Shown in pieces: positions 1,715 to 62,866 of a stretch of 64,000 nucleotides of DNA. The notes below the pieces were generated by a model. That model saw nothing but the letters and a program-made list of their open reading frames with translations, did not search any database and had not been told where the DNA came from. The DNA comes from Octopus sinensis. Lineage: Eukaryota. Where the stretch lies: assembly GCF_006345805.1 (NCBI RefSeq), contig NW_021832232.1, forward strand, positions 62,001 to 126,000, given 5' to 3'. The translations under genes were made by a program, and so were the position numbers. How positions within the stretch are numbered: position 1 is the stretch's first letter; each line of letters opens with the position of its first letter.

Positions 1715-2211
1715 ATGGTGGATAGTCCAATTTATTTGACCAAAGAGCAGACCGAGGCACTCCTAAGAAACATCGAGGAGGTTCGATTCTTACTCAAATG
1801 ATACAAGGAAATACAAATCATAACCAACAGCATCGAATCTCTCAGAATGGCCGAGGAGGGATTTCTCGACTCCAACGAATGGCTGAACGATTTTTCTTCC
1901 ATGAATAAGGGGAAGGACATGATCGTCCCCCTAACCAACTGCGTTAGAACAATCCCCCATACTATTCCAGTTGTTCACCCGAGGGACATTAGAAGATACC
2001 TCTCACGTCCTTATTGATATCGGAACAGGCTATTTTGTAGAAATGGTTGAGTGTGTGGCCTCAATATTAGACTATTTCCAAGGCACAGGAACACTTTGTT
2101 CGCAAGATTAAATATATCCAGGATAAGACCACTCATCTTCGATCTGCCCTATCAGAAAAATTTAATTTGAGGTCTTCCATAATGCAGTCTCTTTCTGCCT
2201 CTCGCTCCTAA
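1715..2211 (+). CDS. PFDN5: Prefoldin subunit 5 (alpha-type), about 3 short introns
   Basis: Spliced translation EIQIITNSIESLRMAEE..MIVPLT..VLIDIGTGYFVEM..AQEHFVRKIKYIQ, ending TAA 2209-2211. The start is uncertain. Confidence 0.85.
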
Positions 2212-2382
2212 AAACTATTCTAACTCCTAATGTTTCTTATTTCATAATTTGCTGTTAAACTGAGTAAACCCACCTTTTTTCAGCACTGGATTGCCATCGA
2301 AATGTGTACTGGTCAGACATATTATCTCAAATAATGTAATGGACTAGAATAAATAAACAACAAATCCAAAATCAGAACAGTA

Positions 2383-4606
2383 CTATGAACGTTCGATCAA
2401 TCCGTGTCGGGAAGGGTCAATAAATTGGGCAATAAACACGTCTACAAACTTATCGAGGAGTCTACGGAAATTGGCCTCTTCACTCTCACTTGCATTTCTA
2501 AAATCGTCAGAGGGGACTACTTTTGTGAAGGTGGGCCAATAATCTCAATATAAAACTTGATTTTAGGCTCCGTCCCACTCGCTCGAAGAGTGGCAGTCAG
2601 CGAGTGGTCGAAATAGAATGTTATCATTTGCGATGAACTTTTGGGAATACGCTATGATGGTGCACTACAATTTACAGCTTTACGGTCGGGATATGAATTG
2701 TCGAACCCAGTGGTGAGGTCACGCACATTCTTGACTTGGAATTCACCACAAAAAGTGGGGTACTACCAAAATAGTAATAAATGGTCGTACTGTGGCAGGC
2801 CCATCATAATTGCGGAGACGGTCAAATACTCGGAGGGTAGTTTGAGGGGAGGGGGACACAAAGTAGGAATTGCGGGTGAGGTGTCTCCCATATTTCCTGT
2901 AGAGACGTTCGAGGAGAGTACTCAGGAATGGATTCTTCTGGTGAGCTGTGAGGTATCCGGTCAATTGGGCGATGAGGACTGCTGCACTGATTCCGTCCTT
3001 ATCCGGAATGTAGGGGTTGCACATATATCCAATGGCTTCCTCATAAGCAAACAGAACTGAGTTGTTTTGTCTGTTCAGTTCATTGCAGGTGTTGCCTATC
3101 CATTTGAAACCCGTCAATGTCTCCTGAGCATTCCTAACATCCCCCTACTTGGAAAATGAAGCCTTCAGCCTCGGCCATCGTCCTTATAAATTTAGAACTC
3201 ACTGCAGAGGTCACCATGCACGTCTTCTGGACTTTGGAATAACAGGAAGGAATACTGTCGCAGTACGTCAACTTTTTCCGACAAAACAGCAAAAACCATG
3301 CCAAAATACACCCAGTTTCGTTGCCCGTGAAAATCTTCCAGTTGCCACTAGAATACTCCTGTGGTACATTACTCGGCCTGTCTCTCAGCCACGGCCAAAC
3401 GGTCGGCGTCGGGGTCATTGGCCAACACAATCCTGGCCCCAATCCTCTCGGCCAACTTCATTGAAAGTTCCTACGGATTTTCAAACAGAATGGACCAAGC
3501 ATGACTCCTCCTCGGGATTGGGGCATTTGACTGTGCCAAAGTCAGGGTCGACATCGCACTGAGTAGGGCATCACCTCGTACCTGTTCTTCGACGTAGCGA
3601 AGAGTGGAAGGAATGCCGATCAAATCGAAGGCGGCTCGGATGTAGGGAGTGCCCACCCCATGCATTGCGCTGTACACTATTGGGGGGACGGACAGCCACG
3701 TATTTCTGCATATTTGTCAATTTAACTTGTAAAAATTAAGTTTGTTCAATTCGTTGAGATATCCACTCAATGCTGTACTGAGGACTGAATTGTCGTCATT
3801 TATGGAAGAGGTGTCCCACGCTGATTCGGACGGCACAGGATTTGCGGAGATCTCCTTCAAAACTTGGTCCTCGACTTCATCTGGGGCCTACCCGTGACCA
3901 GACTTGTCTACCTGTGCCCCGTATTCCCAATATAACTTGAAGCCGTTGTCTTGTTTGGGGTTGTGTGAGGCAGTGATCATCACACCACAACAACATTTCA
4001 AGTGCCGTACCCCGAAAGCCACGAGAGGAGTGGGGACACACTCACTGTACAGGAAAACAGTCACATTTGCATTTCGTAAGACATTGACCACCAGGTGAGC
4101 ATATCTACTCAGTCCGGCAATGTCGGGACCTTCTACTGTTGTGTCGACCGTCAAACCCGACCACCACCTTTCTTCGCTCTTCTTCCTTGAAGGTCGACTT
4201 GAGTATGTTTGATAGGGCCTTGCGTGTATAGTCAAGTCAACCTGAGCAATTTGGATGATAGTGAGCTCATTGAGATACCCAAACCCGCACTGCATTCTTC
4301 CTCTGATTCCTTTATGGTGAGGCAGTGCACACAACCAGCTGTTCCGAATGAGAGACTCGAAAGCATCCGATCCTTCAATATTTCGAAATGACCATTCAAC
4401 AGGAGGTCCTTTACTTGAGCAGATGATTCTTCGTTCTAACTGTATCTCCCTTATACTAACCCTGTCCCACGATAACCATTTGCTAATCGCCTCGTCGAGG
4501 GATACGTCACCAGTTGATTCGTATGTACAGTCCTACTCGTCACTTTCTTTGTAATCACCTCAGTTTGGGCAGAACATATAAACTCGGAACACCCGATTTT
4601 ACCCAT
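2383..4606 (-). CDS. PGM2: Phosphoglucomutase-2 / phosphopentomutase family, multi-exon
   Basis: Motifs [69 protein letters not shown] and DKDGISAA. Introns include 4219-4241 (23 nt). Confidence 0.93.
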
Positions 4607-5287
4607 TACCCTACTTGGTTAACTATTTGAATAAACTATTAAGTTAATCTAATAATAATGTAATCAATTTACACTTTTCATCACAAAATAAGTTGACAGT
4701 CCCCGTGTCCTTTACGCAACTGGCTGTTGAGAGTGCACGGCTTCAACTCTGTTTAAAGAGGACAGATTACACTTAGTGCCTTGCCACAACAAAGCAGAAA
4801 GCTATAAGACCACAGTTCAATCCAGGCTGATCTATTATTATTCGTCAAGTTCACGAAACGTCAAGTTTTTATCGTCGCTGCAACCCGGATGATTTACTTG
4901 GTTTGACATCTCCACGCTCTTTTTGAGATTGCGATTTGCAAAGGTCGCTTAGTTTGTCAGCATTTTGATTGTATGAACAGAGTTGTGTGGTTTTGCATGG
5001 AAAGCAATTAGGAAATACGACTTCATTATTTCGTTTGTAAGAGCGGCAGGGTCCATTCTCAAAATATGCTCAAGTCAAGCTTCCAAGCATTCAGAGTTTA
5101 TGAAACATCTTTCAGCAACAACCTGGCAAAGTTTCCAATTTTTTTATTTACTGGGGGCCAGCTCAGAGAATGCCTCCATAAAGTCTATGCACTCGAATTG
5201 ACATTTATATAATATATTTGACTGTAAATCCTCACTGTCTCTTCTTTGGTTGTTTTCACTTCGTTCATGCCGTCATGTCTGAGGTGC

Positions 5288-5610
5288 AGAAGAAAAGTGC
5301 ACCGCCACTTGGATTGCAAAACAGGGAGCTAAACGAAAACCGTCGAGAAACCTTTATGGGTTTACAGTAACGGAGGAAAAGACGAGACGATGTGCCATCA
5401 AATTGGCAAATGAATTTCAGCTGGACCAACCCATCCCTCAAGAGATGGAAGACCCGACGGAAACGGTTGGAAGTGTTCTTGAGAGAGCCTTTTCCTCTCG
5501 AATCTCTAATTAAAAATAAAAAAAGAGAGAAACAACGGAGAAGAGGCATACGTTGTCTTATTAACTTTCTCTCTCTTTTTTCGGCTTTTCCGTTTTAATA
5601 AAAAATTCAT
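5288..5610 (+). mobile_element. About 320-bp insertion, probably a retroelement 3' fragment or SINE-like unit, with 15-bp TSD
   Basis: TCATGTCTGAGGTGC at 5273-5287 and 5611-5625. The insert ends in AATAAAAAATTCAT and has an internal inverted repeat (AAAAAAGAGAGAAA / TTTCTCTCTCTTTTTT). Confidence 0.55.
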
Positions 5611-9666: not shown

Positions 9667-11550
9667 ATGGGCAAAACTTCCCGAAGGAACCCTGGGAACG
9701 AAATGCTTTCCACGGGTCTGCCCTCCTCCAGACTCCATCCAAACTCATCTGGTACCCTTAAACATAATCGTGAGTCAAACCCCGCGTGAAGACTGCCCCT
9801 GCAGTATCAATCAGGGACATGAATCGGAGTTATCAACTATTTCTAAGTAAAACAGCCAGTAATTATGCACACAAATTACATTTTATTAGACGCCGTTGCC
9901 ATTTACGAATTTCTGCGAATCCGTCACTCTTCCAGGGCACTCCCCTTCTTATAATCCCCACAGCCCATCTTCCTGACTAGAAATCTGTCATATTTCCGCA
10001 CAAAGTGGGGCACTTCGAGGAAGGGGAGACCCTTCAGTGTCGATTCCCTCCTCAAAAGCACGGTTAAAAAAACAATCAAAATCAGTCTAAAAATCGACCT
10101 GTGCAGTGTTACCCTCCCGAACTGTCAGTCCCTTCCTCTCATTCGCAGTTTCGACGGGGACTGTCATCTTCTCAGTGACAGTGGTGGGGGGACAAGTCTC
10201 GGACTATTCTGTATTCCTGTCTAGTCAATGGCAGGTATTGCTCAAATGTGAGACAATTGTCCAAAAGAAGGTCAAAGTTAAGCTGTGGAGGGGGAAAGTA
10301 GAGAACCCGTTGGAGACAGGGGTGAGTATATCATTCGACTGTGATGTGGCCCGTCTCAAACCGTCGAGTATTCTGTTTCAGCTTATTACTGGTTTGTCAT
10401 TTGGATGACGAATTATAGACGTGGATATGTATTACTGCATTCTCCCCTTTTATAACAATTCATTCATCAACCAGTTCTCTTCCGGGGAATACCAGGCTAG
10501 ACTGATTAGTGTGAACGACTCTGTTTGGCTGGATTGTCTATTTTTAGAATTCTTTGCACTCCTCTCCACTTATTGCCTTCTCTGTTGACAAATGGACTGA
10601 CAACCCTCCTGCGAACTGTGATCTGAAAAGTGTTGTTTGTGCGAATTGATTCAGGGGGATTATCCGCTCGGTCAATCACCAGTCGGAATGTGGTGTTCGA
10701 GTTTGTATTCAAAGACAAACATCGACAGCGATTTTGTTCGAGGTCTGACTGGGTCTGTCCATTCTGCCACGTCAATTGTCGGAGTCTGAATTGTCTGATG
10801 ACTCATCTACGCCACTCACACGCCCGTCTCACCTTCAATTCAGTGGTTGTCATATTTGTCCAATTTGTCAAGGGGGGTGTGAACACAATCATCCAAATTG
10901 GACTCGACGACTTGTTCGACGGCTCCTACGAAGGGAACTCATTTCGACTGCATTTCAGTCAACTCGAAGGGACCTTTCCCACCAAGCCACTCTACCGAGT
11001 GCCCATGATGATGATGTTGGTCGTCAATAAGTAGATTTGTGTGCTTATTTTTGGGTCGAGGTGGCGGAAGCCTCTTCTATGGGAAGCTCAGACCCCCCAG
11101 TTTGTGTTGTCCTGAATATTCCAGTGCGGTGTATCACCCAATGACTAATCAGCCACTCACTATCAGACAGGCCGGTCAGGATAACTCGTGGTTTACTTGG
11201 GTCGATTTGATGATGAAAAATGTATTTCACTTTTCACTATTTTAGTTGATGGACGACTTTTGCGATGTCAACGAGGGGGAGAAGGAGATCATGAAACTGT
11301 GGAACTCGTTTCTGTCCTCCAACACAGTGTTGTTGATTCTACTCGTAATCCGCCTAGTTGTCTGGGGGACTGTCATGTGGTTCCCGCCTGTCTTGAGTTT
11401 GTGGAGCAAAATAAAAAGGTGTTGGTGGACAACATGCTATGTCACAACTTTCTACTTCATTTAGTAAATTTGCACCACTTTGGAATTATCGAAACGTGTG
11501 ATATTATGCATATATGGCACTCGCTTGTATTATATATTACTTCCACATAA
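9667..11550 (+). CDS. SUZ12: Polycomb protein Su(z)12 (PRC2 core subunit)
   Basis: IYEFLRIRHSSR|PIFLTRNLSYF, a C2H2 finger CPFCHVNCRSLNCLMTHLRHSH, FDGSYEGN, and the VEFS box DDFCDVNEGEKEIMKLWN..LCHNFLLHLVNLHHFGII. Confidence 0.92.
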
Positions 11551-15298: not shown

Positions 15299-17940
15299 AT
15301 GGTTTAATTTCGTGAGCCACATTTTCTAGGACATTCGAAACTATTTTTCAAAGAGCAAAGACACAAATTCCTCAGTATTCATTTATAACCATTCTTTTAG
15401 AAACATGAAATAAAAAAAGCTCAAGTAAAATCTGAATCTCCACATTCAATTGGTCTCCTATTTTATCTAACAATCAGCAATTCAAAAACCTAGAAAACGT
15501 CCTTCGAACAGAATTTTAAGCAGTGACGACTCAGAACATTCCAGAACGATTCCTAATATTATAGATAGCCCAATCCAGAACAAAGTTACAAGAAAACGCA
15601 CAAAAAAACCCACCGAACTCAAAAAATCGGAAGAACCTCCCCAATCGACAAACATAGACACAAAAACTGCACAACCTGTTTCAAAACGGCAAAATTTCCG
15701 AATGCTGATGGAACGTGAGCCGCCTACCCAACTGGGGTCAAAAGTGCTTCCTGAGGTGTTAAATTGGTGGTGAGTGAGCAGGCGGCAGAGAATTGTCTGG
15801 AGGGACTGACCTTCGTCCTGAGTGGAGTGTTCGAGTCCTTCACAAGGGAAGACATGGAGATGAGCATTCGGCGATATGGGGGACGAATCACTGCCGCAGT
15901 CAGTCGAAAGACTGATTATTTACTCCACGGACGGGACTGTGGGCAGTCTAAGCTGACCAAAGTGTCCATCGTGTTCCAATTTCCAGGCTAAAGAGTGTGG
16001 AACGACAAAAATAGAGGAGGACGAGTACATTGCCATTCTCAAATCCAAACCTTCCAATAAAAAAGTGTGTTATTGAGGGGAGTGTGTAGACTGTTGAGGA
16101 AACGAGGCCTTTGAGGGAACAGGCACTTGTCCGACGTGATTCGACTGTTTGTCACGACTTGTTGGTCGACAAATACCGTCCTCGCACATTGAGGGATATT
16201 ATTGGTCAGCAGGGGGCCAATTCTGCTGCCAATAAACTTCATCGATGGCTTACCAACTGGAGAAATAGTTTAGAAGGGACTGCGGGGGTCGAAGGGGGTA
16301 ATTTCCGGGCTGCACTTCTGTCTGGTCCTCCAGGCGTGGGGAAGACAACGACCGCCCAGGTGGTCTGCAAGGTGATGATGTGGCCATATTGTTAGGAGGC
16401 AGGGATGAGTTACATTGAAATGAATGCCTCCGATTGTCGGTCTAAAAAAAGGGTTGAAGGCCTTTTGAGGGTGTTTCTGAGCTCGCAATCACTCGCGGAC
16501 TCGTTTTCTGGGACGGCAGTTGATAAATGTCTGATTATGGACGAGGTGGATGGAATGGCTGGAAATGAGGACCGAGGAGGCATATCGGTGTGGTGTGGTT
16601 ACTAACTTGTAGGAACTCATTGCTTGTATTAAAACAACGTCTAATCCCATAATATGTATTTGTAATAACCGGTCTGACCAGAAAATGCGATCATTGCGTA
16701 ATCACTGCTTTGATTTGATTTTCCCACATCCCCGAGTGGAGCAAATTAAGGTTGTTTTCATCCCCATTTGGATTAGGCTGGAGTGAGCAGAATATTGACC
16801 AACGAGGGAATTCGAGTGCCATCGCTGGACCCCCTCATCGAGTCATCCAATCGAGATATCCGCCAAGTAATGCTCACATTTGAGTAGATTATCAACACTA
16901 TTTCTCTCTGGAGTTGTCAAAGTGGGATGACGTGGGATCAACTGCTCGCAAAATCGAAGGCGGGTGGCAAGGATATTAAGATTGTTGTCATTTTCTAATA
17001 TTTTGAGGAAGTTTTTGAAGCTTGCAGACGCGCTTTTTCTCAGAATTTTATTATGGGCAAGTCAATGAACGACCGACTTGCAAACTTTTTTGTGGACTAC
17101 TCCCTCATGCCCCTCTTCATGTTCGAGAATTATGTTGGTTTGACAGTCCAAAAGGGGTCGCATTGTAATTTATTTTCAGTGACAATCTCAGTCGGTTTGC
17201 GGAGGCGGCTGATGCCTTTTGTGTGGCGGATACATTGGATGCACAGATCAGAGGTCCCAACCCTTCCTGGGAGTTGCTCCCTCACATGGCACTCTTCCTG
17301 TGTATTTATCTCAGGGTTTTTGGTCGACGGTGGTGCCTCCGTTGGAAGTGAGAGGTTCGTTGAGCAGTCGTCTCGACTTTCCGAGTTGGTTCGGTAGATA
17401 TTCGACGAGGAATAAAAACCGTCGTTTATTGGAGGAATTGTATGCCCATTCCAAAACAAGGTTGTGACCTGAATATAGTCAGGGTTCTAAACGAGTCCGT
17501 GGATGTCATGTTGATGTATCGGCTGACTTGCCTGAAGAGCATCATTGCCTGCAAACTGAGCAACAATTCCAAAAACGAGGGGATTAGGAAAGTGGGGGAC
17601 CTCCTCAACTACTACTACCTTCAGAAAGAGGACATGGAAACTATATTTGCGTTGTGTGATTTTGGCAAGTCCAGTCTGAGCAATATTCCGTCGAATGTGC
17701 TTTTGTTTTTAATACGGCAAGGTCAAATCTGCCTTGACTCGGCTGAGGAAGAAGGATAACGTGCGGATGCCATACTCTCTGGTGAGTTCACTCCGTGCAA
17801 AGAGACGAAAGCGTGTTGTGGGGAGTGATGATGAGTTGGAGGTATCTTCTGAAAGTAGTTTTGATGTCGTCCCGCTCATTAAGACCAAGGCACTCAATAT
17901 TCATTATGCTTAGGCTAAAAACAAACGGGTAAAAAAGTGA
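15299..17940 (+). CDS. RFC1: Replication factor C subunit 1
   Basis: M|DIRNYF N-terminus, BRCT domain (CLEGLTFVLSG..YGGRITAAVSRKTDYL), LLVDKYRP, Walker A GPPGVGKTT, IEMNASD and MDEVDGMAGNEDRGG. Confidence 0.95.
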
Positions 17941-18811: not shown

Positions 18812-20110
18812 TTAAAGTTCTACATTAATTTGTGAGAATAGCTCGTCCTCATCCTGGTAATTGACCGGTCTGTCACAGGACTAATATATTCAAAATTCAG
18901 TTTAACAAACCTTTGGAATTTTTAAAAAAGAATTTCTCGTAAATTCTTCGGCTTCTTCTAGTGAATCCGAAATTAATATATTTGAAAAAACAGTCCCAGA
19001 TTGAACCAGAAAATAACAAAAATTCAAAAAACCTGCCAAATTTCAACAGCTACCGTTCCCAGCGAATAATTAAAAGAATTTGGTACTTGAATAAAATACG
19101 GATTTCTAATGATTGGAGGCTTCCATTTTCCTTGATAATTAACGTTTTTGATCTCACTGGGCCTATAAGCCCCCTACTAGTTTTAAAGCGAGTCTGAACA
19201 CGATAATTCGGGTTGACTACGACTTGTGGTTGCCACTTCCCAAAAAACTCTTCGTCCCAATCTTCGGGTTTGACCGCATTTGGGTCAATAATAAATTTTT
19301 CTTTAACCCAGTCACGCGGCTCGAAATCTTCAGGATCGGGAATGTTTTCCCTGTCGTCCCAACTTTCAGGTTTAATGACCTCGCTGTCCTGGAAGTATTA
19401 AATTAGGAATAACTGGAATCATTCGAGGCTCTTTGAGGTCCATATCTGACAACAAGTCTCCACTTTTCACAGTTTTATCATCAACCCGAACATCATAACT
19501 TTGGTTTCTGAAGATTATTAGAGTGAATAAATGAGTATCCTGTCCAAGATCGTCCACCTAGACCATCAAACTACAGGATGTGCCATATATGGGACTTTGT
19601 CCTTCAGTTTGTATAGTCTGTTGTTGTACTCCACCATAACTTTAATCTCTGCATCCGTGCCACACACGTCGGGGCCTAAATTGTCTACTTTATGAGTTTT
19701 TTGCCGAATATGATCGTAGATTGTATTTGGTCGTCCATCATTTCTGGGTTCTCCAATCTCGGCATGAGTTTTAGATATGATCCAGCACATCCAAGACGAG
19801 TTGTCGCTCTTGTGGTGTACTGGAATATCAGGTCTTTTCCCCTGTGTTAAATTCTCGAGCAAAGTTGGCAGAAACAGAATAAAATTTGTTGTCTTCCGAA
19901 GTGACCATTCCATTATTTTCATAATTGCACGTTTTATTGCCTGGGAAATAGACCATCTGTCCGTAGTTGGCTCTCATTTTGGACTGTGTCCAATTTCTGA
20001 GTGGGAAGTCTACAATATTATTCTTTGATCGAACATTGGTCATCAAATCTCTCTGCAAAGTAGATTTTTGGAGAAATCAAATTTGCAAATAAAAATGCAT
20101 ATAAAACCAT
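18812..20110 (-). CDS. CALR: Calreticulin-like ER lectin chaperone (divergent, one apparent frameshift)
   Basis: Signal peptide MVLYAFLFANLIS, KIYFAERFDD, GMVTSEDNKFYSVSA, IIFG|PDVCG, THLFTLII, P-domain repeats KPESWDD, KPEDWDEE and GKWKPPII, VEIWQV, and C-terminus NVEL*. Confidence 0.85.
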
Positions 20111-20898: not shown

Positions 20899-22060
20899 AT
20901 GATTTACAACCAAATGACTTTCAAAGGTACTAGTTGTGGACATTTTCAGACGGGGATACAACCGTGATCGCGAATGGTGGCTACAACGACTCAATAAGCG
21001 AGTACATATCCATTCGTGATATGACCTTCATCGGCAGTGGTAAATTCGGTCGTGTTTTCCGTGCCAAAATAAACACCTGTGACACCACCGTGGCCATAAA
21101 ACGAGTAGTTCAACGCCACGTCCATAAAGTACCATTTCCCTTCATTTCCAGAACCCCGAACTACGAATAATGCGGCAGCTTCAGCACGTGAATATAGTCA
21201 CCTTGTTGTATTACTTTTATTTGGTGGATTCGGACTTTGAGGTAGTCCCCTGCCTTATTCCAGTCCAATGACTTGATCCTCCACTTGGTCCTCGAATACC
21301 TCCCTCAGACAGTAGCCAATGTAATCCATTTCTACAGTCAGGAAGGCATAGAAATGCCCCAAATATTCATTAAAGTACTCTTTCACCCATATTCTGCAGT
21401 TGTATGTATATCAGTTGTTGTTGGCGTTGAGTTATGTCCATTCCTTGGGGATTGTCCACAGGGATATCAAGCCAAAGAACTTGTTGGTCAATCATGAGAC
21501 AGGAGTACTCAAATTGTGCGACTTTGGCAAGTTGTCGATTAGTTGAGAGTTGTAGTTCCAAAAAACTGGTAGAAGAAGGGTTGAATGTGTCCTACGTGTG
21601 TTCGAGGTTTTATCGGGCACCCGAATTGGTGTTGGGGGCCAAGAAGTACGGGCACAGTATTGATATGTGGTCGGCGGGGTGTGTCATTGGGGAGTTCTAT
21701 GCGGGCACTCCCATCTTCCGAGGAAAGAACTTTATGGACCAGTTTATTCAGATTGTGAGAGTTATGGGGAGTCCTACCAAAGAGGAGTTGGATGCTATGA
21801 ATGATCAGGCTGTTCTTAGGGAATTTCCCCGGGTGGACAAAGTACTGTGGGAGGATGTACTTTGGTGGATTTATTCTTAGTATTTGACTGATCTACCACC
21901 CTTGGGTGTACATCTGATGGATCGGATTATGAATTATACTCCCAAATTGCGCATCTCTGCTCGCGATGCCTGTTTTCATGACTTCTTTGCTGAGCTTTTT
22001 CAACCTGGAACAACTCTCCCGAGTGGCGACAGTCTCCCTACCTTGCTTCGTCCTACATAA
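20899..22060 (+). CDS. GSK3: Glycogen synthase kinase-3 family kinase (divergent)
   Basis: [49 protein letters not shown] and DMWSAGCV. Introns are 22-25 nt. The C-terminus may extend by one exon. Confidence 0.9.
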
Positions 22061-26768: not shown

Positions 26769-28101
26769 ATGATCACATTTTCACATAATTTGCCATATCC
26801 TAATAAATTCCCGTCCAGTACTGTAATGCATTCAATAAAGCTATATTTATTATTGATTTATAATAATATCGACTTTTAAGTGACCGAAGCTGCACCAGAT
26901 AGAAGGAAAGGAGGTTTTTTAAGACTTTCAAAAATCCTATAGTATCGGCTGAACCATACGATCCATCGATTGAAGATGCTGACAATGATGAACCACTGGT
27001 TGAAATCCACTTTTCAGTCCTCTAGCGATACTATCAAAAAACCAACGACCAAAAAAAACGACTCACAGAAAATGTTAGAAATATTCTCATATTTCGGAAC
27101 CTGAGCGAGGTTTTTGAAAAATTAATTTCTAGGCCGACTTGAACGCTACCCTCGACGCAATGTTTGAGAAAAAAGTGATTTCTTTATGGAGTATACTTGC
27201 AGGTTAGCAAAGGGGAGATCATCGTCAAAGAGAACGACGACCAAGACTATTTTTATGTAATAGAAGAGTAATTCAATATTCAACAAATTCAGTGGAGTTT
27301 TCGACGTTTTTAAAACCATGTCCAACGGCTCGCAGTCCAAAGTGCTGACATACAACAACAGTGGTTTCTTCGGGGAGTTGGCTTTGATGTACAACCAGCC
27401 GAGGGCAGCCACCGTTAAAGCAGTCAATAATGGAATTCTGTGGTGCATGGTATTTTGTTTAACAGTCTAATTGACAAGGACAGGAAAACCTTCAAAAAAA
27501 TTATAGTTCGGGGAGCATTCAACAAGCGGAAGGTCTATGAGAATCTCGTCAATAAAGTCAAGATTCTCTCCGCCTTGCCTGTTTTTTGTGATCTGTATAT
27601 TGTAGGAGTATGACACCATCAAGATAACCGACGCTCTTGTCACCTACCAATTTGAAAAAGGCCATCAAATAATCAAACAAGTTTTACTTTTTATGCATTC
27701 CAGGGGGACGAAGCAAATGGAATTTATTTCATCGAGTCGGGCGATGTTGTCTGCAAAGCGTCTGTTCCTGGAAATATGAATGAAGAGAAGGTCGTGAATC
27801 GCCTCACCCAGGGCGACTACTTTGGAGGTATTCCAGACCCCTCTCTCAAACATTTTGGATAATAATTCTTAGAACTGGCAATTCTATTCAACAAACCACG
27901 GGTTGTGTCAGTATACGCAGAGACTCCCGTTGTTTGTGCATGTACGCTTGTTTGTGTTCAAATGTAGTCTTGGATGTGGAGGCCTTTGAGCGCTTAATTG
28001 GGCCTTATTCTTCTTTTTTAGCTGACAAATTTGATGAGTATCATGCTCAGCTGAAGGAAATTGTTGGAATGGATTTTGACTTTTCCGACCTTCGCTCTTA
28101 A
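26769..28101 (+). CDS. PRKAR: cAMP-dependent protein kinase regulatory subunit (RII-like body)
   Basis: RRKG|VSAEPYDP, KTNDQKKRL, QGENDDQDYFYVIE-like CNB-A, FFGELALMYNQPRAATVKA, and CNB-B QGDYFG..NKPR. The start is uncertain. Confidence 0.88.
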
Positions 28102-44808: not shown

Positions 44809-46130
44809 TTAGAAGATATCTGGACACATGGACCAATCCTGTTTTGCCTTGGCAGTCCAATACCCGCCGATATATCGATACATTGAAAGTCCAGTCCACT
44901 CATCTGTCATCAATTTAAACCAAAGTGGACAATGTGTGTTCAAAGCTGCTAAATGCCAGAAAAGACTTACAATGATTGTTTCTCTTATCTCGTTGCTTTT
45001 GTTCAAGACTCAGTTTAATCTGACTGGCCAAATCCCAGTTTCCTTCCTCCATACTTCGCTGATCTGGCCTCAGTCGAGAGTCCGTCGGGGCCACTCCATT
45101 TTCGTGGGCGTTCAACTGCAAAGCAAAACGACCAAAACGGTATTTATTCTCATTTTCCGGCCTAACACTAACCAACAGTCACTCACGGATATCCGACAGC
45201 ACTCCACAAATCAACAAACACTCCATTCCCCTGCTCCACCCTCAAATAACTGTCCCACTCCCCCTTTAGACGCATCTGCACCACTCCACTGGCATCTTTA
45301 ATATCTCCCGTCACCTACCAATCAAAAACACACAAAATGACCAGTCGGGTTATTCGGGTAGAAAAATAACTGGAGGCATGGAAGGTCAGTTTGCATGAAT
45401 GTCCAGTCGTGTGATTCACCACGGTCAATTCCCCGTGATTATCAACCCACATTTTCCCCACAATAATATTATTCACGTTGATTGGCAGTCTTTTCCACGA
45501 ATATGAATTGCCGCTCATCCGAAAGTGGACAACCGAATGACCTGCCATGAACAACACAAACAACCAAGGGGGATCATCCTCAAATACTTGCCTCTAAATT
45601 TATTGGAGACAGTCATTTCATGGTAGTACAGCCACTCGGCTGACTGGGTGTGTTGGGCCATGGTTGGGGGGTGGTGGGAGACTTGTTCGGCAATTGTCCT
45701 CCACCCAAGATCAGCCAGACGGTCGAATTCGTAGGTCTCGGAAAGAAGGGGGTTGAATGGTTTGTAGAAACGGTGTTTGGTGGTGGAGTAGGAGGAGACC
45801 ACAAAAGCACACAAATTGGCCATTTCCATTACGGGATCAGTCGGAAATGAGGCAGCCTTGTCCAGAAGGTGGCTATATTCTAACAGTTCTGTTATTCGCT
45901 GGAGGAGGGATATTGGCTCGTTGAAGTTTATTGGGAAGGGAATTTTGGTGAGGTCCAATTCGATGAATTTTGAGATTATTGGCCACAGTTTGACCGACAT
46001 TTCCAGTCGATCAGGAATTGTGGACCTCCATTTTCTATTTTCAGTGGCCGGTTTTTCGTTGTAGAAAGAAATACCGTCATCACTGGAAGTAAGTTGAGAT
46101 ATGATACCCAGTCTTTAATTGACAGTCCAT
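44809..46130 (-). CDS. OSBP: Oxysterol-binding protein, ORD only
   Basis: DLTKIPFPINFNEPISLLQRITE, KPFNPLLSETYE, EQVSHHPP, IIVGKMWVDNHGE, PTDSRLRPDQR and GGYW..W..CPDIF*. Confidence 0.92.
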
Positions 46131-46462: not shown

Positions 46463-47266
46463 ATGCCTGGTGGTTCCGACGTGACACAAAACAGTGAAGA
46501 AGTTGAAATAAGCGTAGAAGAACTCGTCAGACGACTTTACATCGTAAAACTATATTGACCAATAAGCAACAAGTAAAAAGGCTTTCCAGAATGAGAAGTT
46601 AGCGCCTGAATTGTTGCCACACAACGAGGAACTTGTCGCAGCCCTGATCTCCCAAATAACCCTTATTGACCAGAATATAAAATCTGTAAGAACACGTGAC
46701 CTACGAGTGAGTCTTCACCAACTGGAGGCAATCCCCACCCAATAATATCGTAGAATGAGCGCCTCAAGTATTTGGTGTCGTCATATCTGCGTTGTCGCCT
46801 CAAAAAAGTATTAATATGGCTGAGAGTGCAGATCGAGGACTGCATGGAACACTACCAACAACTCGGCAACTACCATGTGCTGTCTTCCTACGAATTGGAC
46901 TTTCTGAAAGGGTAGTGTTTGTGTGGAGGGCAGTTTCAACGACTTGATAAAGGGGTATATTCGGTATCATGGACTGGCCCACTTGCCGATAAACATGCGG
47001 CACTTTAAGGAATGTGAGAAGGGTGGTGAGTAGTCCTGACTGTGCAGAGTCCAATTTCCCTAAGCCGTATTTGCACAGATTTGTGTATATTCGGTGTTTG
47101 GAGAATATGGGGCAGGTGGTGTTGGGAGATCAGACAACTGGGAGGTGTGGTGTGTGCTCTTATTATCAGGAATAATATCGTCAATCTTAGTAAGGACGAC
47201 CAGTTCATTATTCGTTATGACCTCATCAGAGATCTTGTCCTATCCAACCGTGTTGAACTTATTTGA
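46463..47266 (+). CDS. GINS4: GINS complex subunit 4 (SLD5)
   Basis: FQNEKLAPELLP, LHQLE|NERLKYLVSSYLRCRLKK|IE, FVYIR and a C-terminal IIRYDLIRDLVLSNRVELI*. Confidence 0.88.
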
Positions 47267-55308: not shown

Positions 55309-57982
55309 TCATTTTGTGAAATAAAAATTGTTAAAATCGAGTCGAAAACCAAGGAATTTGAGGTCATCGGTATCATTCGTCAAAAGCGAACACAAAAAAA
55401 ACTTAACTTTCTCCTACCAATGACCAGAAGGCAACGCAACCTTGAATGTAAGGGAATACACGTCAAATCTGGACTTATAATCCGCCACGTGAATGCTAAA
55501 CCTTCTCGCGTCAAAACCACATTCGCCCGTCTGCCCGAATAATAAAATCCCCAACCTTTTCACATCGGGAATACTCACCAAATGCCTCGGCAATAAGCAA
55601 GTTTAAATGGTGCTCAAACTGGACTACAATGTCGAATATACTTCTCAGTTCTCCCAACAACTCCTACAATCGGGACAACCAGGCACACCAGGGAAGAATC
55701 GTCAATGAAGGATCCAACCAGGATGGTCTTCAGAAACACATTATGAGCAGCTGCCAAGTCATTCAAGTCAACAACAGTCTCCAAACTCTGAAGAAAGGCA
55801 TCCCAAGCACATTCCAAGACCTGCGAATTAGTGATTCCAACCCACCTCAAAGTTAAGATAATACTGAATCTGTGCCACAAATTGAATCATACTGGAGAGA
55901 AGAGTGAAACACACGTGCAGAACAGGTCTCAACTCTAACCCATCCCTCATCACTAAATCAACCCACAAGTTTCCTCAAACGACGGGAATTGTGGATTAGA
56001 CTGAGCCAGGCTGCAGACAGAGTATACTCCAGTCGTTTGGACCTCCACAGAAAGTTAAAAGCACGCAAATACATCAGCATTGCGTCATGTCCTATCACCT
56101 ACACCTCAGCACACATCAATCAACAGTGTTCAGAGCCAGAGGGAGCTCATAGTTTAGGGTAAAGACATCCCAGCCGACCTCATCATTGGCCAGCTGAAGA
56201 AGTCGAACAGAAAGTCTCTCAATTACACAATCGGACTCATATTGGGCACTTGTACTCCTGATTGCTGAGTCGAGAATTGAATTGAGTGTGTGTCTTTGCT
56301 GGAGACTGGCAGACTTGCTCAGTTCAGGTCTAAACCTTACCAATCACAAAACAACTCCAGCAAATCCATCAAATGCCGAACAAAGTCCCCTTGTGAGAGC
56401 AGCAGGTATCGGCGGATCGCACTTATGTGTTCCACAAAGCGATGAATCCTCGAAAAGGCCTTCAAAACGTGGCTATTCGCCATTTTGTGTATTTTGAACA
56501 GTCGTAGTTCAAATTCCTCGTTGTCTGAGCACATAAAATAGCCTGATTGCAATAATATTGTGATTGTACCGTCTGAGAATAATTTGGAGGTGAGTTGAAT
56601 GAATTGTGAGGACTTGACCAACGTGGGGTCCTCGATGTAGCCCAGAAATGCGACACAACGACCAATCGACAAAATCTAGGCTAGTTCAGTCCACTTTACC
56701 ATTTCTGCTTGTTTAATGCTCAGAAAAGTCGGAATCATTGACTTGCGAATTATATATTTGCATGTCCAAATCTCGTGGTCCCCGACTCCGGGATTCAACG
56801 ACACAAAAAACTATAAAAGCAAAAGGAGAGCACAAACCTCTAAATAAGGGTCGTGAATGACACCAGATTGCACGAAAGTAAGAATGAAGCGCATCAGTGG
56901 TTCCAAAGTCAGTCTAAGCAATCTCTCCACCAACTCCCGAATGAAGGGATCACCACTACACGACCAATATTGGTAGATGTGGGATATCAGTTCTCCCCCC
57001 TTCTTGTCTAGTGGAGTCAGACACACTCCCCACCCAGACAACTCTCACTGATCATTCCCAGTGCTTTCAATGTCTTTTTCATATCGTAGAAGGACACCTC
57101 AATTCGAGTCAAACTCAGACTTTGTGTGACATTCTTTTGTGATATTTGTTGGTTTATATGTGAGGCCATGGTCGACACAAGTCCATAATAATCCACAAGC
57201 TCTTGTTTGAGGGAGTATTGGAATGCCTACTCAACTAAGCCAGTCAAATAACCTTCATAACTAAGTATGGAGTGCCTGATTCCTCTCGATTGCCCGACAT
57301 TGCCTCCACTTTGCCAAACAGCCAGCCAATTTCCCTCAGTCGGGAGGCCCGGTCTGCCAATGGCTGGGACAACTACACCTAATTTAACCCAAATTCCTTC
57401 TCTGCAGGGCTGTACCCCAAATCAATGTCCTGGATTAGGTTTAAGGCGTCGCTGATTACGAAATCTTGTTCCTGTCTGTACTTTTCGACCACTAAATGAT
57501 CATTTCCACACAACTGCTAGTTTTTGGAACAATTTGTCGTCCGACCGGGAGAATTCTGTTTCCCGAGACAGAATTTTGAGAGTTTTGGAGGAAAGTGTGT
57601 GTTTGTGGGAAGGGAGACCACATTTTTTGACAAAGTGGTAAATAAAGGCGACAAATCTTCCCGAATCATTCCTCGATTGGCGAATTCGTCTCAATAGTTC
57701 AAAGAGTCGAGTGATTTGGCGTCCTGGCCCATTTTGTTTCCTTAAAAGGTCAACAATTCTCATTTCGTCGACTCTTTCAAAATCAGAATTGCGATTTCTA
57801 TATATATAAAGGAATTTAATGAATTGTGACTGATATAATGTATGCTTACTGCATGAGATGGCCAAGGCTGAATTTTATAAGGCTCTGTTCTGATCCTAAA
57901 AGCGTTGTTAACTAAAATAAAGACCATCATGTTGTTTGACAATTTTTTTGCATAGGGATTTACAAAGTTGTTCAAATTCCAT
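55309..57982 (-). CDS. TUBGCP3: Gamma-tubulin complex component 3
   Basis: YWSCSGDPFIRELV, RRYLLLSQGDFVRHLMDLL, VGWDVFTLNY, QVLECAWDAF and FLGFRLDFNNFY*. Confidence 0.92.
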
Positions 57983-59536: not shown

Positions 59537-59960
59537 CAGGGGTCTCAAATTCACTTCTTTCGAGGGTCCGCGGGACAGACTATTAATTTTGCGATTTAAC
59601 GGGATATTTGTTTCCTACTATGATTTGTGTAATATTCTGAAACTTTATTATTTGAAAGCATTTAACAGCAGATTGATTAATTTTTATAAATAAAATATGT
59701 TCCAGAAACTCGACATTTTTTTTTCTTGATAATAGCGTCAATGTCTGAGGTGAAATCCTGAGTCACCGTCAATATTAGAATCTCACTTAGATGAGTGTCG
59801 GTGAGTCTCAATCGAAATCTTTTTTTGTTATGTTCATTAAAGAAAAAAGTTTTCACATGTCCCTCCAAAAATTGACAAAATCTTCGCAGCTAAAACTGTA
59901 CAAAGACTCATATGGGAAAAAATATACATTAATACAAATCGTCATTGGAAATGATTAATT
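59537..59960 (-). mobile_element. hAT (SPIN/GTF2IRD2-like) 3' remnant with one TIR
   Basis: CAGGGGTCTCAAA at 59537. The minus strand reads NKKRFRLRLTDTHLSEIL..TSDIDAIIKKKKCRVS. Confidence 0.75.
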
Positions 59961-60009
59961 AGTTGTTAATTTTAATAAAATCTGTTTAGGTTTAAATAAT
60001 AAAGCGTGA

Positions 60010-60400
60010 AAGTATGCGGATAGTGAGACTAACTAAAGAAATTTTCAATATTTTACGAACTATCATAGAAAAAAATTCAGAAATTGAATTTCCAGGAAGC
60101 ACAAGTCGTTTAGAGAGGTTCTGAATGAAGAAACTATTTGAAACATTTATATTTGAAAATGGAGTTTTATTCTACAATAGAACAGGTCTAAAATTGCGCT
60201 TTCTTGCGAGGATGAACTGGAACTGAAGCTAAAATTTATTGAAGTAGAATTTATCCTAATGTAATTTAGGCGGAACATAATCTTAATCACCTTGGATGTG
60301 ACCGCTTATTCTCAAAGTGGGAAGATTAATTTATGGAGTCATGAGGGAAGAGATACAGCTTGTAATTTCTCGTTGTGCACCATGCAAAGTAAATTTGAAT
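60010..60400 (+). mobile_element. Integrase H2C2 zinc-binding remnant (Ginger/GIN/KRBA2-like)
   Basis: HNLNHLGCDRL..YGVMREEIQLVISRCAPCK, split across frames. Confidence 0.5.
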
Positions 60401-61278
60401 TTTCACAGTTAAAAAATTGTTAATCTAAAAAATTGTTATGCTCAAAGGCAACGATAACTCCGATAATTGCGAGTAGTCGAGACAGATACATTGCAATTAG
60501 ACCCGCGAAAAAGCATACCTGAATATAATAAATTCCGGAGAAAATGATACAACGAATAAGGTGGAGATTGTATGAGGATGCCATTGAAATTGGGCCCAAA
60601 ACTTTTAAGGTAAATATTTTTTAAAATTAATTTCAAGACAAAATAACGATACTAATATTCGAAAGCTTCTTTATTCGATGGAGTCGAAATAAGAAAATTC
60701 AGAGTTTTAGATAAATAAAACAATATATATAAGATCCATAGTGAAGATGGGGAAATAATCGAGGAAGTTCATCTTTGACACTTATCTTCTGAGTAATAAA
60801 ATTGAATGATATGAGTGATATTCCAACAACTCTGAAACGTTGGCTAACAACTTTTTATTGGGTAGCATAGGGCAAAGAGGTCAGGAGATACAAGTCTCGC
60901 TTTCGATACCTACTGAATGGAGTCTTGCAAGGCTGACTGCTATTGCCAGCTTCCTTTAACCTGCAGTAAAATTATTTTTTACCACTCTTATTTATTTTGA
61001 TCAAAAGGAAAATAGCATCTTAAAAAATAAACTTACATTGGAAATTGTATTTAATTTCCTAAATTTTCTTGGCGATTAAAATCCAAATTTGGTAATATTC
61101 CCATTTATTTATTAAAACGGCGAGAAAATATTTTTTAAAAACTTTCCTATTAGTTATATACAAATGACTGAAATAACTGATTTGGGGTATACTTAATTCT
61201 AAATTTATTATAAATATTTGTTAAATTAGTATTTAGAGTAACAAAGACAACTATTTTAATTATTTTAAATCATTTAGA

Positions 61279-62866
61279 CAATCTCATATACGAGAAATAG
61301 TGCTTGAACGTTCGAGCACAGGAATTTTTGGTTTTTCTTTTATCGGAGGAACTGACAAACACGCTGGAATTTTTGTGTCCTATATTGTTCCCGGGGGTTC
61401 CGCTGATACAAATGGACAAATTCAGAGTGGTGATAAAATAGTAAAAGTATGGAACATATTGAAATATGTATTTTTAGGTAAATGAGTACAATCTTACCAA
61501 TTTAATGCATTCCCAAGTCGCAAAAATCCTTAAAAATGTGTCTGAGCCAACAATTTTTTATGTGAGACATGAGCCCGAAGGTTCATTCGTTAAGTTAATT
61601 TTAGAATTTGAAGTCTTTCAAACACTAAAAAAATATGAGAATCCATGTTTAACTATAAAGACAACAGACAAATCCTCCACATATATGAAGGCAGAATTTT
61701 CATTCTCCTCTGAATCAGAACCAAGAATTCCAGGCGCTGGACTTTCATTTATTTGTGGAGATATTTTATTTGTGGTTAATGTGGGTGACGCCGACTGGTG
61801 GCAGGCAATTAAAATATCCCATTCTTCAAGGGAACAGGTATCAAATGCCGGATTAATTCCAAGTAAATCGAGGTTTTAAATTTTATTACTTTTTAGAGTC
61901 GAAAAAATATATTTAAACCGATTTAGAAAAGTTGATTTTCAATTTAATACTTTAAAAGGATACAATGTTAATTATTATTGTTTATTTTTAGAGCTTAGGA
62001 CGCGCTACTAATACAAATATGTTTCATTCTTTAAAATCAAAAGGATCAAAGACAAACAAAGAGTCGTCATTTGACACTTTTCTTGATTACGTCATACCCT
62101 CATACCACGCTACCGTACTCACTACATGTAAGAAACAATTTTATATTTATAGTCAATTACTCACGACCTGTTTATATAATGGGAGTTGAATATGAAAAAA
62201 TAACAAATGATTTGGGCAAAGAAAACCCTGAAAAGTACACAACAGCAGTTTTATGTAATATTTTTTGTTTTATAATTCTTTAGCCACAAGTCGTAATCCA
62301 AGACCAAATGAAATAGAAGGAAAATCATTTTATTTTTTATCAAAAAAGAAAATTTTGGAAATGTTTAGAGAAGGAGAATTCGTAGAGATCGGAGTATACA
62401 AAGACAACCTTTATGGAACCACCTTCAATGAAATCAGTTTGAGAACTACAAAACCGGTTTCTTATTCTAAAATAATATATTTTTTTGTAGGGAACGTATT
62501 GTTTACTTGATTTGAATCCGAGCTCAGTCTATCGTTTGATCTCTCTGGGAATTCATCCGATTGTTATTTTCGTAAAGCTGACATCACTCGAAAATACCAG
62601 GTTATAACAAAGTCTATCTAAAATTTAGTGCAATATATACAAATTGCAAAAGATCTAAGCATATTGAATTGTACGAAAAAATGAAAGGAATAGAAGAGAA
62701 ATCTTGTCGACTTTTTACGAGTTTAAAATTTTTTGTAATATTATTTATAGCTGTTGTGAGTGGATCTTGTTACTCGGAGATATTTGATAGAGTCAAAGAG
62801 ACTATTGACGTGATTGGTCATTCTAAGCAAGGATGGATTCCAGACGATTTCAGCATTTTTAATTGA
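61279..62866 (+). CDS. DLG-like MAGUK (PDZ-SH3-guanylate kinase)
   Basis: PDZ (GFSFIGG..GIFVSYIVPGGSAD..GDKIV), SH3 (GLSFICGDILFV..DWWQA..GLIPSK) and GK (TSRNPRPNEIEGKSFYF..LYGTT). The 5' end is unresolved. Confidence 0.85.

What the first reader, a model, noticed from the sequence alone, without database searches (positions are those of the whole stretch)
1715..62866. Ultra-short introns (22-29 nt), often lacking polypyrimidine tracts and using GAG/AAG acceptors
Seen: conserved frames are restored by removing, for example, 4219-4241 (23 nt, AAG), 9752-9774 (23 nt, GAG), 20927-20949 (23 nt), 21242-21263 (22 nt) and 46912-46933 (22 nt, GTAGTGTTTGTGTGGAGGGCAG). Several are purine-rich, and several end in tandem GAGTAG. 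Known: most animal introns are much longer and use YAG with a pyrimidine tract, while very short introns are known in ciliates, nucleomorphs, microsporidia and dicyemids. Inference: splice sites may be chosen mainly by a length ruler, implying a modified U2AF/SF1 machinery.
Basis: partly seen in the sequence, partly recalled or inferred. Interest (0 to 1): 0.7.

Follow-up and report, generated by a model that had tools for sequence, protein, structure and literature searches.

The report
Dicyemid parasite's 25-base introns, in octopus assembly
The window really is full of genes interrupted by introns only about 25 bases long, but this is the already described gene architecture of dicyemid mesozoans, tiny kidney parasites of octopuses, whose DNA here sits inside a contig filed as Octopus sinensis.

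Summary
The core observation holds. A protein-guided spliced alignment recovered 81 homology-anchored introns in 11 conserved genes. Of these, 73 are 21-29 nt (mode 25; mean 25.7 ± 2.6 for those ≤34 nt). Boundaries are GT-AG in 78 and GC-AG in 3, and GT..AG ranks first of 256 dinucleotide pairs in both genes tested.

The fifth, 9752-9774 (the GAG case), is not.

"Often GAG/AAG" is overstated: the -3 base is T51, C23, A6, G1, so 91% are YAG. Exonic decoy GT(21-29)AG strings have A or G at -3 in 67% of cases, so YAG preference is intact. No real pyrimidine tract exists. Introns are U-rich throughout (40% T), with weak T at -5 to -7 and an A-rich patch at -8 to -10.

The window is 100% identical to GCA_006345805.1 contig VCDQ01002185.1, labelled Octopus sinensis. 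That species is the host from which Dicyema japonicum was collected for genome sequencing. Gene density, very divergent proteins and GC of 36.6% point to dicyemid DNA co-assembled with the host.

Ultra-short dicyemid introns were reported in 2007, 2010, 2019 and 2026, so the phenomenon is already known. The length-ruler and modified-U2AF ideas are untested.

The parts
2386..4532 (-).
   Evidence: Spliced alignment to 10 homologues. The Gnomon model XP_036354911.1 'LOW QUALITY PROTEIN [Octopus sinensis]' skips exons.
9752..9774 (+). Not verified.
   Evidence: None of 7 SUZ12 homologues aligns here. Its PWM score of -3.8 is typical of exonic decoys.
10849..11357 (+). Conserved half of SUZ12 (zinc finger and VEFS box) with introns 10849-10872 (24 nt, AAG, a 3n intron with no in-frame stop), 11222-11245 and 11332-11357.
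   Evidence: 7 of 7 homologues support the first two.
15666..17910 (+). Replication factor C subunit 1 gene with 12 introns: 15756-15781, 15962-15986, 16065-16089, 16372-16395, 16588-16612, 16751-16776, 16867-16887 (GAGTAG), 16984-17007 (GAG), 17157-17179, 17289-17314 (GC-AG), 17461-17482, 17697-17721 (AAG).
   Evidence: Six homologues. The GAG, the AAG and the GC-AG have no in-frame alternative acceptor.
19030..20071 (-). Calreticulin gene with introns 20010-20034, 19676-19704 (GC-AG, less certain), 19558-19595 (38 nt), 19389-19413 and 19174-19199.
   Evidence: PDB calreticulin alignment and spliced alignment.
20899..22045 (+). GSK3 kinase gene with introns 20927-20949, 21129-21151, 21242-21263, 21375-21399, 21531-21555 and 21857-21880.
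   Evidence: Alignment to human GSK3B. Five of these six introns sit at the same positions in the divergent copy L001, which has one further intron.
26942..28089 (+). cAMP-dependent protein kinase regulatory subunit gene with introns 26999-27025, 27110-27132, 27175-27202, 27268-27292, 27450-27478 (AAG), 27581-27605, 27681-27703, 27828-27872 (45 nt) and 27942-27967.
   Evidence: Alignment to PKA RII-alpha.
33115..35677 (+). Anoctamin (TMEM16) gene with 13 introns: 33330-33353, 33523-33555, 33695-33719, 33811-33839, 33992-34020, 34104-34127, 34266-34385 (120 nt), 34585-34612, 34780-34811, 34910-34937, 35054-35078, 35285-35311, 35563-35590.
   Evidence: Alignment to mouse TMEM16A.
44981..46027 (-). 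Oxysterol-binding protein gene with introns 45542-45564 and 45315-45341.
   Evidence: Alignment to OSBP1.
46472..47263 (+). Two further introns, near 46544-46580 and 47000-47047, have ambiguous ends.
   Evidence: Alignment to human SLD5.
55321..57088 (-). Gamma-tubulin complex component 3 gene with 9 introns: 57008-57033, 56811-56837, 56676-56699, 56543-56569, 56330-56355, 56099-56124, 55953-55980, 55821-55845, 55664-55688.
   Evidence: Alignment to GCP3.
61291..62842 (+). DLG-type MAGUK gene (PDZ, SH3 and guanylate-kinase domains) with introns 61447-61477, 61873-61896, 62255-62283, 62457-62490, 62601-62628 and 62721-62750. These are 24-34 nt and lie in an AT-rich stretch.
   Evidence: Alignment to DLG4.

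Best explanation
These are ordinary U2-type (GT-AG, occasionally GC-AG) spliceosomal introns shrunk to near the physical minimum. They lie in nuclear genes of a dicyemid mesozoan, most likely Dicyema japonicum or a congener from the same host. Its DNA was co-assembled into the Octopus sinensis genome.

Shown here:
- Removing 21-29 nt GT..AG segments restores collinear alignment to conserved proteins in 11 genes.
- The ends carry only weak extra signal: +3 is A or T, and there is no GTAAGT.
- The 3' end is still YAG in 91% of cases.
- Introns are U-rich throughout. An A-rich patch sits 8-10 nt upstream of the 3' end, followed by a T-biased spacer of about 3 nt.

Inferred:
- The A patch is the branch site, and the acceptor is the first usable YAG a minimal distance downstream. 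AGs only 1-6 nt from the patch, mostly GAG, are skipped.
- The tight length range reflects minimal 5'ss-to-branch and branch-to-3'ss spacings in a conventional spliceosome, not a separate ruler.
- Retention of an intron almost always gives a frameshift or an in-frame stop, which would let surveillance remove unspliced mRNA.
For: Intron set and statistics.

Specificity of the boundaries: GT..AG is the best of 256 end pairs in two genes.

Comparative support: a second GSK3 copy with 69% nucleotide identity (L001) shares five of the window's six intron positions and has one further intron. Its six introns are 23-26 nt. Exons are conserved and intron sequence is not.

Sequence signals:
- The -3 base is T51, C23, A6, G1, against decoys with G 39% and A 28%.
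- A at -8, -9 and -10 occurs in 35, 29 and 33 of 75 introns, where 19 are expected (p = 1e-4, 0.01 and 5e-4).
- The A patch holds in all length classes.
- A leave-one-out PWM gives AUC 0.92.
- 18 of 20 introns with length divisible by three carry an in-frame stop, against 31 of 58 of the others (Fisher p = 0.003).

Source and taxon:
- The window is 100% identical to GCA_006345805.1 contig VCDQ01002185.1.
- Two PGM2-like database proteins are named Octopus sinensis.
- D. japonicum was collected from O. sinensis, and its genome has GC 36.7% with 49% LINE-rich repeats (PMC6736024). The window has GC 36.6%.
- The window's proteins are only 31-49% identical to their best database hits, with no close cephalopod orthologue.

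Published dicyemid introns:
- 26.2 ± 1.9 nt (PMC2222250).
- Median 27 nt (PMC6543705).
- In D. japonicum: a reduced 'GTa' 5' signal, a 3' signal of only 'AG', a weak A run and no pyrimidine tract (PMC13644364).
Against: - A short-query search for transcript-derived proteins found none.
- Only 21 of 78 introns have a unique in-frame GT/GC..AG solution within ±15 nt. The exact ends of the others rest on alignment quality.
- No sequence labelled Dicyema was matched directly, so the taxon is inferred.
- No AG-exclusion zone is seen between the A patch and the acceptor. The branch-site assignment is therefore indirect.
- The A-patch and 3n statistics rest on 75-81 introns.
Confidence: 0.85

Rival explanations
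1. Splice sites are picked mainly by a length ruler. The pyrimidine tract and YAG are dispensable, GAG and AAG acceptors are common, and this implies remodelled U2AF35, U2AF65 or SF1.
For: - The length distribution is narrow (sd 2.6 nt).
- Splice-site information is weak and there is no pyrimidine tract.
- A few well-supported RAG acceptors exist: 16984-17007, 17697-17721, 4310-4335 and 4219-4241.
- Some real introns score like decoys on the PWM, for example 4219-4241.
Against: - 91% of acceptors are YAG, against 33% in decoys of the same length.
- Only one GAG acceptor was found in 81 introns.
- Positional A and T signals exist.
- Sequence alone gives AUC 0.92.
- Introns of 30-45 and 120 nt are also used.
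- In myxozoans with equally short introns, U2 snRNA and U2AF1/2 are conserved (PMC13644364).
- The splicing-factor genes are not in the window, so they could not be examined.
Confidence: 0.12
2. The contig belongs to another tiny-intron animal parasite, such as a myxobolid myxozoan, and not to a dicyemid.
For: Myxobolids have median intron lengths of 22-27 nt and reduced splice signals (PMC13644364). No Dicyema-labelled sequence was matched here.
Against: - The assembly is of an octopus, the obligate host of dicyemids and the source host of D. japonicum.
- Myxobolids cycle between annelids and fish.
- GC of 36.6% matches D. japonicum (36.7%), not H. salminicola (29%).
- The window is rich in LINE fragments, as reported for D. 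japonicum.
Confidence: 0.06
3. These are genuine octopus genes with an unusual intron class.
For: The record is labelled Octopus sinensis, and RefSeq annotated proteins on it.
Against: - About 17 genes lie in 64 kb, with introns of about 25 nt.
- Proteins are 31-49% identical to their best hits, with no near-identical cephalopod orthologue.
- Gnomon could only produce exon-skipping 'LOW QUALITY' models.
- Divergent extra copies of single genes sit on other unplaced contigs.
Confidence: 0.03
4. The segments are not introns but frameshifting errors, pseudogene decay or DNA-level eliminated sequences.
For: One nearby PGM2 copy (L002) does look decayed.
Against: - All 81 anchored segments are bounded by GT/GC..AG, and GT..AG ranks 1 of 256 pairs.
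- Five GSK3 intron positions are conserved in a 69%-identical copy while the exons stay under protein constraint.
- cDNA-versus-genome comparisons established the same structure in Dicyema (PMC2222250).
Confidence: 0.02

Closest known systems
Ultra-short spliceosomal introns of Dicyemida (Aruga 2007, PMC2222250; Ogino 2010, Gene 449:70; Lu 2019, PMC6736024; Zverkov 2019, PMC6543705; Hadjez 2026, PMC13644364)
   Same: - GT-AG introns of about 25-27 nt with a very narrow spread.
- About 5-6 or more introns per gene, at positions that interrupt conserved proteins.
- A 5' signal reduced to GT plus a weak +3.
- No pyrimidine tract, and a weak A run upstream of AG.
- Highly divergent proteins, GC of about 36.7%, and LINE-rich repeats.
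- The host is Octopus sinensis.
   Different: - In this set the -3 pyrimidine still carries information (0.72 bit; 91% Y), whereas the 2026 logo description mentions only 'AG'.
- The record is filed under the host's name.
- The depletion of stop-free 3n introns and the 3.7% GC-AG introns were not found in the dicyemid papers I read.
Myxobolid myxozoan introns (Henneguya, Thelohanellus, Myxobolus; PMC13644364)
   Same: Median length of 22-27 nt, reduced splice-site motifs, an A run as presumed branch site, and a parasitic animal with a compact genome.
   Different: A different phylum and different hosts. H. salminicola has GC of 29%. Nothing here ties the contig to Cnidaria.
Paramecium tiny introns with translational control of splicing (Jaillon 2008, from my own knowledge; PMC8997360, seen, abstract only)
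   Same: Mean length of about 25 nt, weak signals, and a deficit of 3n introns lacking in-frame stops, so that retention triggers nonsense-mediated decay.
   Different: A ciliate with a variant genetic code and TA-bounded DNA elimination. Here the organism is an animal with the standard code. The 3n signal rests on only 20-21 introns.
NAGNAG tandem acceptors (Hiller 2004, from my own knowledge)
   Same: GAGTAG and GAGCAG ends where the downstream YAG is the better acceptor.
   Different: Here the two choices cannot be told apart without RNA.

Membership tests
Dicyemid-type ultra-short U2 spliceosomal introns | GT-AG (rarely GC-AG) boundaries. | tested here: met
   78 GT-AG and 3 GC-AG among 81 introns. 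GT..AG ranks first of 256 pairs in RFC1 and PGM2.
Dicyemid-type ultra-short U2 spliceosomal introns | Length of about 20-30 nt with a narrow spread (26.2 ± 1.9 nt; median 27 nt in the literature). | tested here: met
   73 of 81 are 21-29 nt, with mode 25. The mean is 25.65 ± 2.55 nt for those of 34 nt or less.
Dicyemid-type ultra-short U2 spliceosomal introns | Removal restores a conserved reading frame. | tested here: met
   Collinear alignments to homologues in 11 genes. Five GSK3 intron positions are shared with copy L001.
Dicyemid-type ultra-short U2 spliceosomal introns | Reduced splice-site motifs, no pyrimidine tract, and a weak A run upstream of AG. | tested here: met
   Donor +3 is A30, T27, G15, C6, and positions +4 to +9 carry at most 0.22 bit each. 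The pyrimidine fraction in the last 10 nt is 0.56. A is enriched at -8 to -10. The -3 position keeps its pyrimidine preference.
Dicyemid-type ultra-short U2 spliceosomal introns | Absent from the mature mRNA. | not testable with these tools
   No transcript-derived protein was found, and no read data are available. This is established for Dicyema in the literature.
Dicyemid-type ultra-short U2 spliceosomal introns | The genome of origin is a dicyemid. | tested here: inconclusive
   The record is labelled Octopus sinensis. The dicyemid origin is inferred from the host relation, GC content, repeats, intron architecture and protein divergence. No direct match to a Dicyema sequence was available.
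Myxobolid myxozoan ultra-short introns | The genome of origin is a myxobolid (a cnidarian parasite of fish and annelids). | tested here: inconclusive
   The intron features overlap. The host and the GC content argue against it.
Ciliate tiny introns or internal eliminated sequences | A variant genetic code with in-frame TAA/TAG in conserved exons; eliminated sequences bounded by TA. | tested here: not met
   Exons are open under the standard code in all 11 genes. The boundaries are GT..AG. The genes are animal-type (MAGUK, SUZ12, RFX, LINE elements).
U12-type (minor) introns | A conserved /RTATCCTT 5' motif and a TCCTTAAC branch site. | tested here: not met
   The donor PWM shows no such motif.

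The most novel reading that the evidence does not exclude
Two things that I did not find in the papers read could be new.

1. The Octopus sinensis reference assembly (GCA_006345805.1) carries large long-read contigs of dicyemid origin: the 552-kb contig of this window, plus the 688-kb and 47-kb contigs fetched here. They hold divergent copies of the same genes (GSK3 at 69% nucleotide identity, PGM2 at 90-96%). They may therefore represent more than one dicyemid genome, with RefSeq proteins mis-assigned to octopus.

2. Dicyemid introns show a Paramecium-like purge of stop-free introns whose length is a multiple of three. That would mean splicing fidelity in an animal with 25-nt introns leans on translation-coupled mRNA surveillance.
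Probability: 0.35. Interest if true: 0.45.

Novelty: already known. Interest (0 to 1): 0.3.

Why it matters
The phenomenon itself matters because it probes the minimal requirements of the animal spliceosome. It has been described repeatedly for dicyemids, most recently in a 51-genome comparison (PMC13644364).

What this case adds is practical:
- A host reference genome contains parasite contigs whose genes the standard annotation pipeline cannot model. It produced exon-skipping, chimeric 'LOW QUALITY' proteins labelled octopus. These can mislead comparative and phylogenomic work on cephalopods.
- The same contigs are a free long-read resource for dicyemid genomics.

The small-sample hints would be worth checking genome-wide, because they bear on how such information-poor introns are recognised accurately. 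These hints are the intact YAG selection, the A patch at -8 to -10, GC-AG at about 4%, and the deficit of stop-free 3n introns.

Tried and rejected
1. A naive count of GT..AG segments that join two open frames was no different from control dinucleotide pairs, so it was uninformative.

2. A longest-spliced-ORF dynamic programme overcalls introns and picks wrong ends. I used it only for draft queries.

3. Equal penalties for any intron ends let the boundaries slide by a few nt. I replaced this with the 256-pair scan.

4. A search for transcript-derived, junction-spanning proteins using a 148-aa GSK3 query returned only one Gnomon model from another contig. No RNA-level evidence was obtained.

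5. The SUZ12 N-terminus could not be aligned to any homologue, so 9752-9774 stays unresolved.

6. The GINS4-like fragment at 50005-50138 looked like a processed copy that might reveal a spliced junction. It is a DNA-level duplicate that still contains the intron.

7. Rfam and tRNA scans of the window found nothing, so no snRNA could be inspected.

8. The PWM cannot rule individual candidates in or out. The homology-supported intron 4219-4241 scores as low as a decoy.

9. Some aligner calls were rejected or left out as ambiguous: 45514-45533, 45168-45186, 47000-47030, 11016-11034, 19820-19860, 46544-46580 and the DLG hinge region.

Full report
**What is in the window**

The window has GC of 36.6%. 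It is packed with animal genes on both strands, interspersed with LINE/reverse-transcriptase fragments and a pogo-like transposase. The genes are:
- PGM2-like
- SUZ12
- an IPK-family kinase
- RFC1
- calreticulin
- GSK3
- PKA regulatory subunit
- anoctamin
- RFX
- an LRR coiled-coil protein
- OSBP
- GINS4/SLD5
- a dynein heavy-chain fragment
- GCP3
- a DLG-type MAGUK

Every conserved gene is broken into short open frames that change phase every 100-300 nt.

**Method**

A naive scan for frame-joining GT..AG segments was not informative, and a longest-spliced-ORF programme overcalled introns. I therefore wrote a protein-versus-DNA local aligner. It allows GT/GC..AG introns of 15-400 nt in all three phases. 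Its guide sequences came from three sources:
- homologues from the protein searches;
- target sequences printed in PDB alignments;
- my own memory, for part of the calreticulin C-terminus only.

**Check of the observation**

The aligner recovered these introns:

| Gene | Introns |
|---|---|
| RFC1 | 12 |
| GSK3 | 6 |
| PGM2 | 13 |
| Anoctamin | 13 |
| GCP3 | 9 |
| PKA-R | 9 |
| Calreticulin | 5 |
| GINS4 | 3 |
| OSBP | 2 |
| DLG | 6 |
| SUZ12 | 3 |

That makes 81 in all. Their properties are as follows:
- 73 are 21-29 nt, with mode and median 25.
- The mean is 25.65 ± 2.55 nt for the 78 introns of 34 nt or less.
- The outliers are 38, 45 and 120 nt.
- Ends are GT-AG in 78 and GC-AG in 3.

As a chance control, I allowed only one of the 256 possible end-dinucleotide pairs at a time. 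GT..AG gave the top score in both genes tested:

| Gene | GT..AG | Next best pair | Median of the other pairs |
|---|---|---|---|
| RFC1 | 972 | 856 | 397 |
| PGM2 | 1188 | 1019 | 561 |

The runners-up are mostly the same introns slid by a base or so.

- **4219-4241 (AAG).** Chosen with 9 of 10 PGM2 homologues. It fits the homologue length, whereas the 44-nt alternative used by the RefSeq model deletes seven residues.
- **20927-20949.** Required to join the ATG exon to the conserved N-terminus. Its site aligns with the GT..CAG stretch of a second gene copy.
- **21242-21263.** It has an overlapping 22-nt alternative at 21224-21245.
- **46912-46933.** Fits human SLD5.
- **9752-9774 (the GAG example).** It lies in the unalignable SUZ12 N-terminus, has no homology support and scores like an exonic decoy. 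I count it as unverified.

**Acceptors and the pyrimidine tract**

The -3 base is T51, C23, A6, G1. Non-YAG acceptors are therefore 8.6% (95% CI 3.5-17%).

The well-supported non-YAG acceptors are:
- AAG at 4310-4335, 4219-4241, 17697-17721, 27450-27478 and 10849-10872;
- GAG at 16984-17007, where the only in-frame alternative uses the same acceptor.

The AAG at 3875-3898 is ambiguous. Several apparent GAG ends are in-frame NAGNAG pairs, such as GAGCAG at 15781 and GAGTAG at 16887 and 4105.

From my own knowledge, human acceptors have roughly 5% A and under 1% G at -3, so these figures are not exceptional.

The decoy comparison is more telling. Inside 10.2 kb of internal exons there are 232 decoy GT(21-29)AG strings, and their -3 base is G in 39% and A in 28%. 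Real sites therefore select strongly for pyrimidine at -3.

There is indeed no pyrimidine tract:
- The pyrimidine fraction in the ten bases before NAG is 0.56, against 0.47 in exons.
- 22 of 78 introns have at most 40% pyrimidine there.
- 9 of 81 have interiors of at least 60% purine.

Instead, introns are U-rich throughout (T 40%, against 27% in exons), with T favoured at -5 to -7.

**Other signals**

- A is enriched at -8, -9 and -10: 35, 29 and 33 of 75 introns, where 19 are expected (p = 1e-4, 0.01, 5e-4). This holds in short, modal and long introns alike. The same weak A run is reported for D. japonicum.
- Internal AGs do occur in the last ten bases. About half of them are GAG. There is no clean AG-exclusion zone.
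- A leave-one-out position matrix separates real introns from decoys with AUC 0.92, so sequence contributes as well as length.
- 20 of 78 introns have a length divisible by three. Of those, 18 carry an in-frame stop, against 31 of 58 of the others (Fisher p = 0.003). The sample is small, but this is the pattern known from Paramecium.

**Where the sequence comes from**

The PGM2 search returned two near-identical proteins:
- XP_036354911.1, 'LOW QUALITY PROTEIN: phosphoglucomutase-2-like [Octopus sinensis]';
- XP_029656900.1, also named Octopus sinensis.

The first is exon-for-exon identical to the window. It starts with an unrelated ORF at window 12465-12749, so it is a chimeric, exon-skipping model. 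Its locus, in GCA_006345805.1 contig VCDQ01002185.1 (552 kb), is 100% identical to window 1-15740. The window is therefore filed as octopus.

That label does not fit the biology:
- About 17 genes lie in 64 kb, with 25-nt introns.
- RFC1 is at best 49% identical to any database protein, and SUZ12 at best 31%. Neither has a close cephalopod orthologue.
- Other unplaced contigs of the same assembly carry divergent copies of these genes with the same architecture. GSK3 on a 688-kb contig has 69% nucleotide identity and six introns of 23-26 nt, five of them at the window's intron positions. PGM2 on a 47-kb contig has 90-96% identity. Both contigs share the window's LINE families.

Octopus sinensis is the host from which D. 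japonicum was collected for genome sequencing. That genome has GC of 36.7%, 49% LINE-rich repeats and very short introns. Several dicyemid species can share one host.

I conclude, at about 85-90% confidence, that this is dicyemid DNA co-assembled with the host. I could not match a sequence labelled Dicyema directly.

**Comparison with what is known**

Very short, uniform Dicyema introns have been reported repeatedly:
- 2007: 26.2 ± 1.9 nt (PMC2222250).
- 2010: Ogino et al.
- 2019: median 27 nt (PMC6543705) and the D. japonicum genome (PMC6736024).
- 2026: compared with myxobolid myxozoans. That paper also describes the reduced 'GTa' and 'AG' signals, the missing pyrimidine tract and the A run (PMC13644364).

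The finding is therefore a correct re-discovery of a known architecture.

The data favour a conventional spliceosome working at minimal spacing: GT, a branch A about 8-10 nt from the end, and then the first usable YAG. A separate length ruler is not needed. Whether U2AF or SF1 are modified cannot be addressed from this window, which holds no snRNA and no splicing-factor gene. RNA junction data would be decisive and were not available.

Noticed in passing
Whole window (= GCA_006345805.1 contig VCDQ01002185.1, record positions about 62001-126000): The sequence is deposited as Octopus sinensis but has the gene architecture, GC content and repeat load of a dicyemid parasite. RefSeq/Gnomon proteins from it carry the octopus name. 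One example is XP_036354911.1, a chimeric model running from window 12749 to 2655.
   Followed up: partly
L001 10001-11200 (VCDQ01004311.1, 688 kb) and L002 9403-12076 (VCDQ01012670.1, 47 kb): The same assembly holds further dicyemid-like contigs. One carries a GSK3 copy with 69% nucleotide identity that shares five intron positions with the window and is not syntenic with it. The other carries a PGM2 copy with 90-96% identity and three internal deletions, which looks like a decayed duplicate or a second genome. More than one dicyemid genome may be present.
   Followed up: partly
window 17289-17314, 46728-46753, 19676-19704: GC-AG introns make up 3 of 81 (3.7%). That is more than the roughly 1% or less usual in animals (from my own knowledge). 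The RFC1 case has no GT alternative in frame.
   Followed up: partly
All 3n introns of the set; exceptions are 56543-56569, 62721-62750 and 10849-10872: Introns whose length is a multiple of three almost always contain an in-frame stop: 18 of 20, against 31 of 58 for the others (p = 0.003). This is as in Paramecium, where intron retention is policed by nonsense-mediated decay.
   Followed up: partly
window 50005-50138 (-): A 138-nt fragment duplicates GINS4 exon 1, intron 1 and exon 2 (46488-46624) at 88% identity, with the intron included. It is a DNA-level duplication lying among repeats.
   Followed up: yes
window 59567-60402; also 131-927, 22767-26766, 29138-31157, 38319-39810: Dispersed repeats and LINE/reverse-transcriptase fragments are shared, at 40-85% identity, with the two other contigs. 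There is also a pogo-like DDE transposase at 54404-55497 and a dynein heavy-chain C-terminal fragment at 52305-54311 that seems interrupted.
   Followed up: no
window 61447-62750 versus 55664-57033: Intron composition and length follow the local base composition. In the AT-rich DLG gene the introns are 24-34 nt and very T-rich. In GCP3 and RFC1 they are 24-28 nt and often G/T-rich, for example GTGGGGAGTGTGTCTGACTCCACTAG.
   Followed up: no
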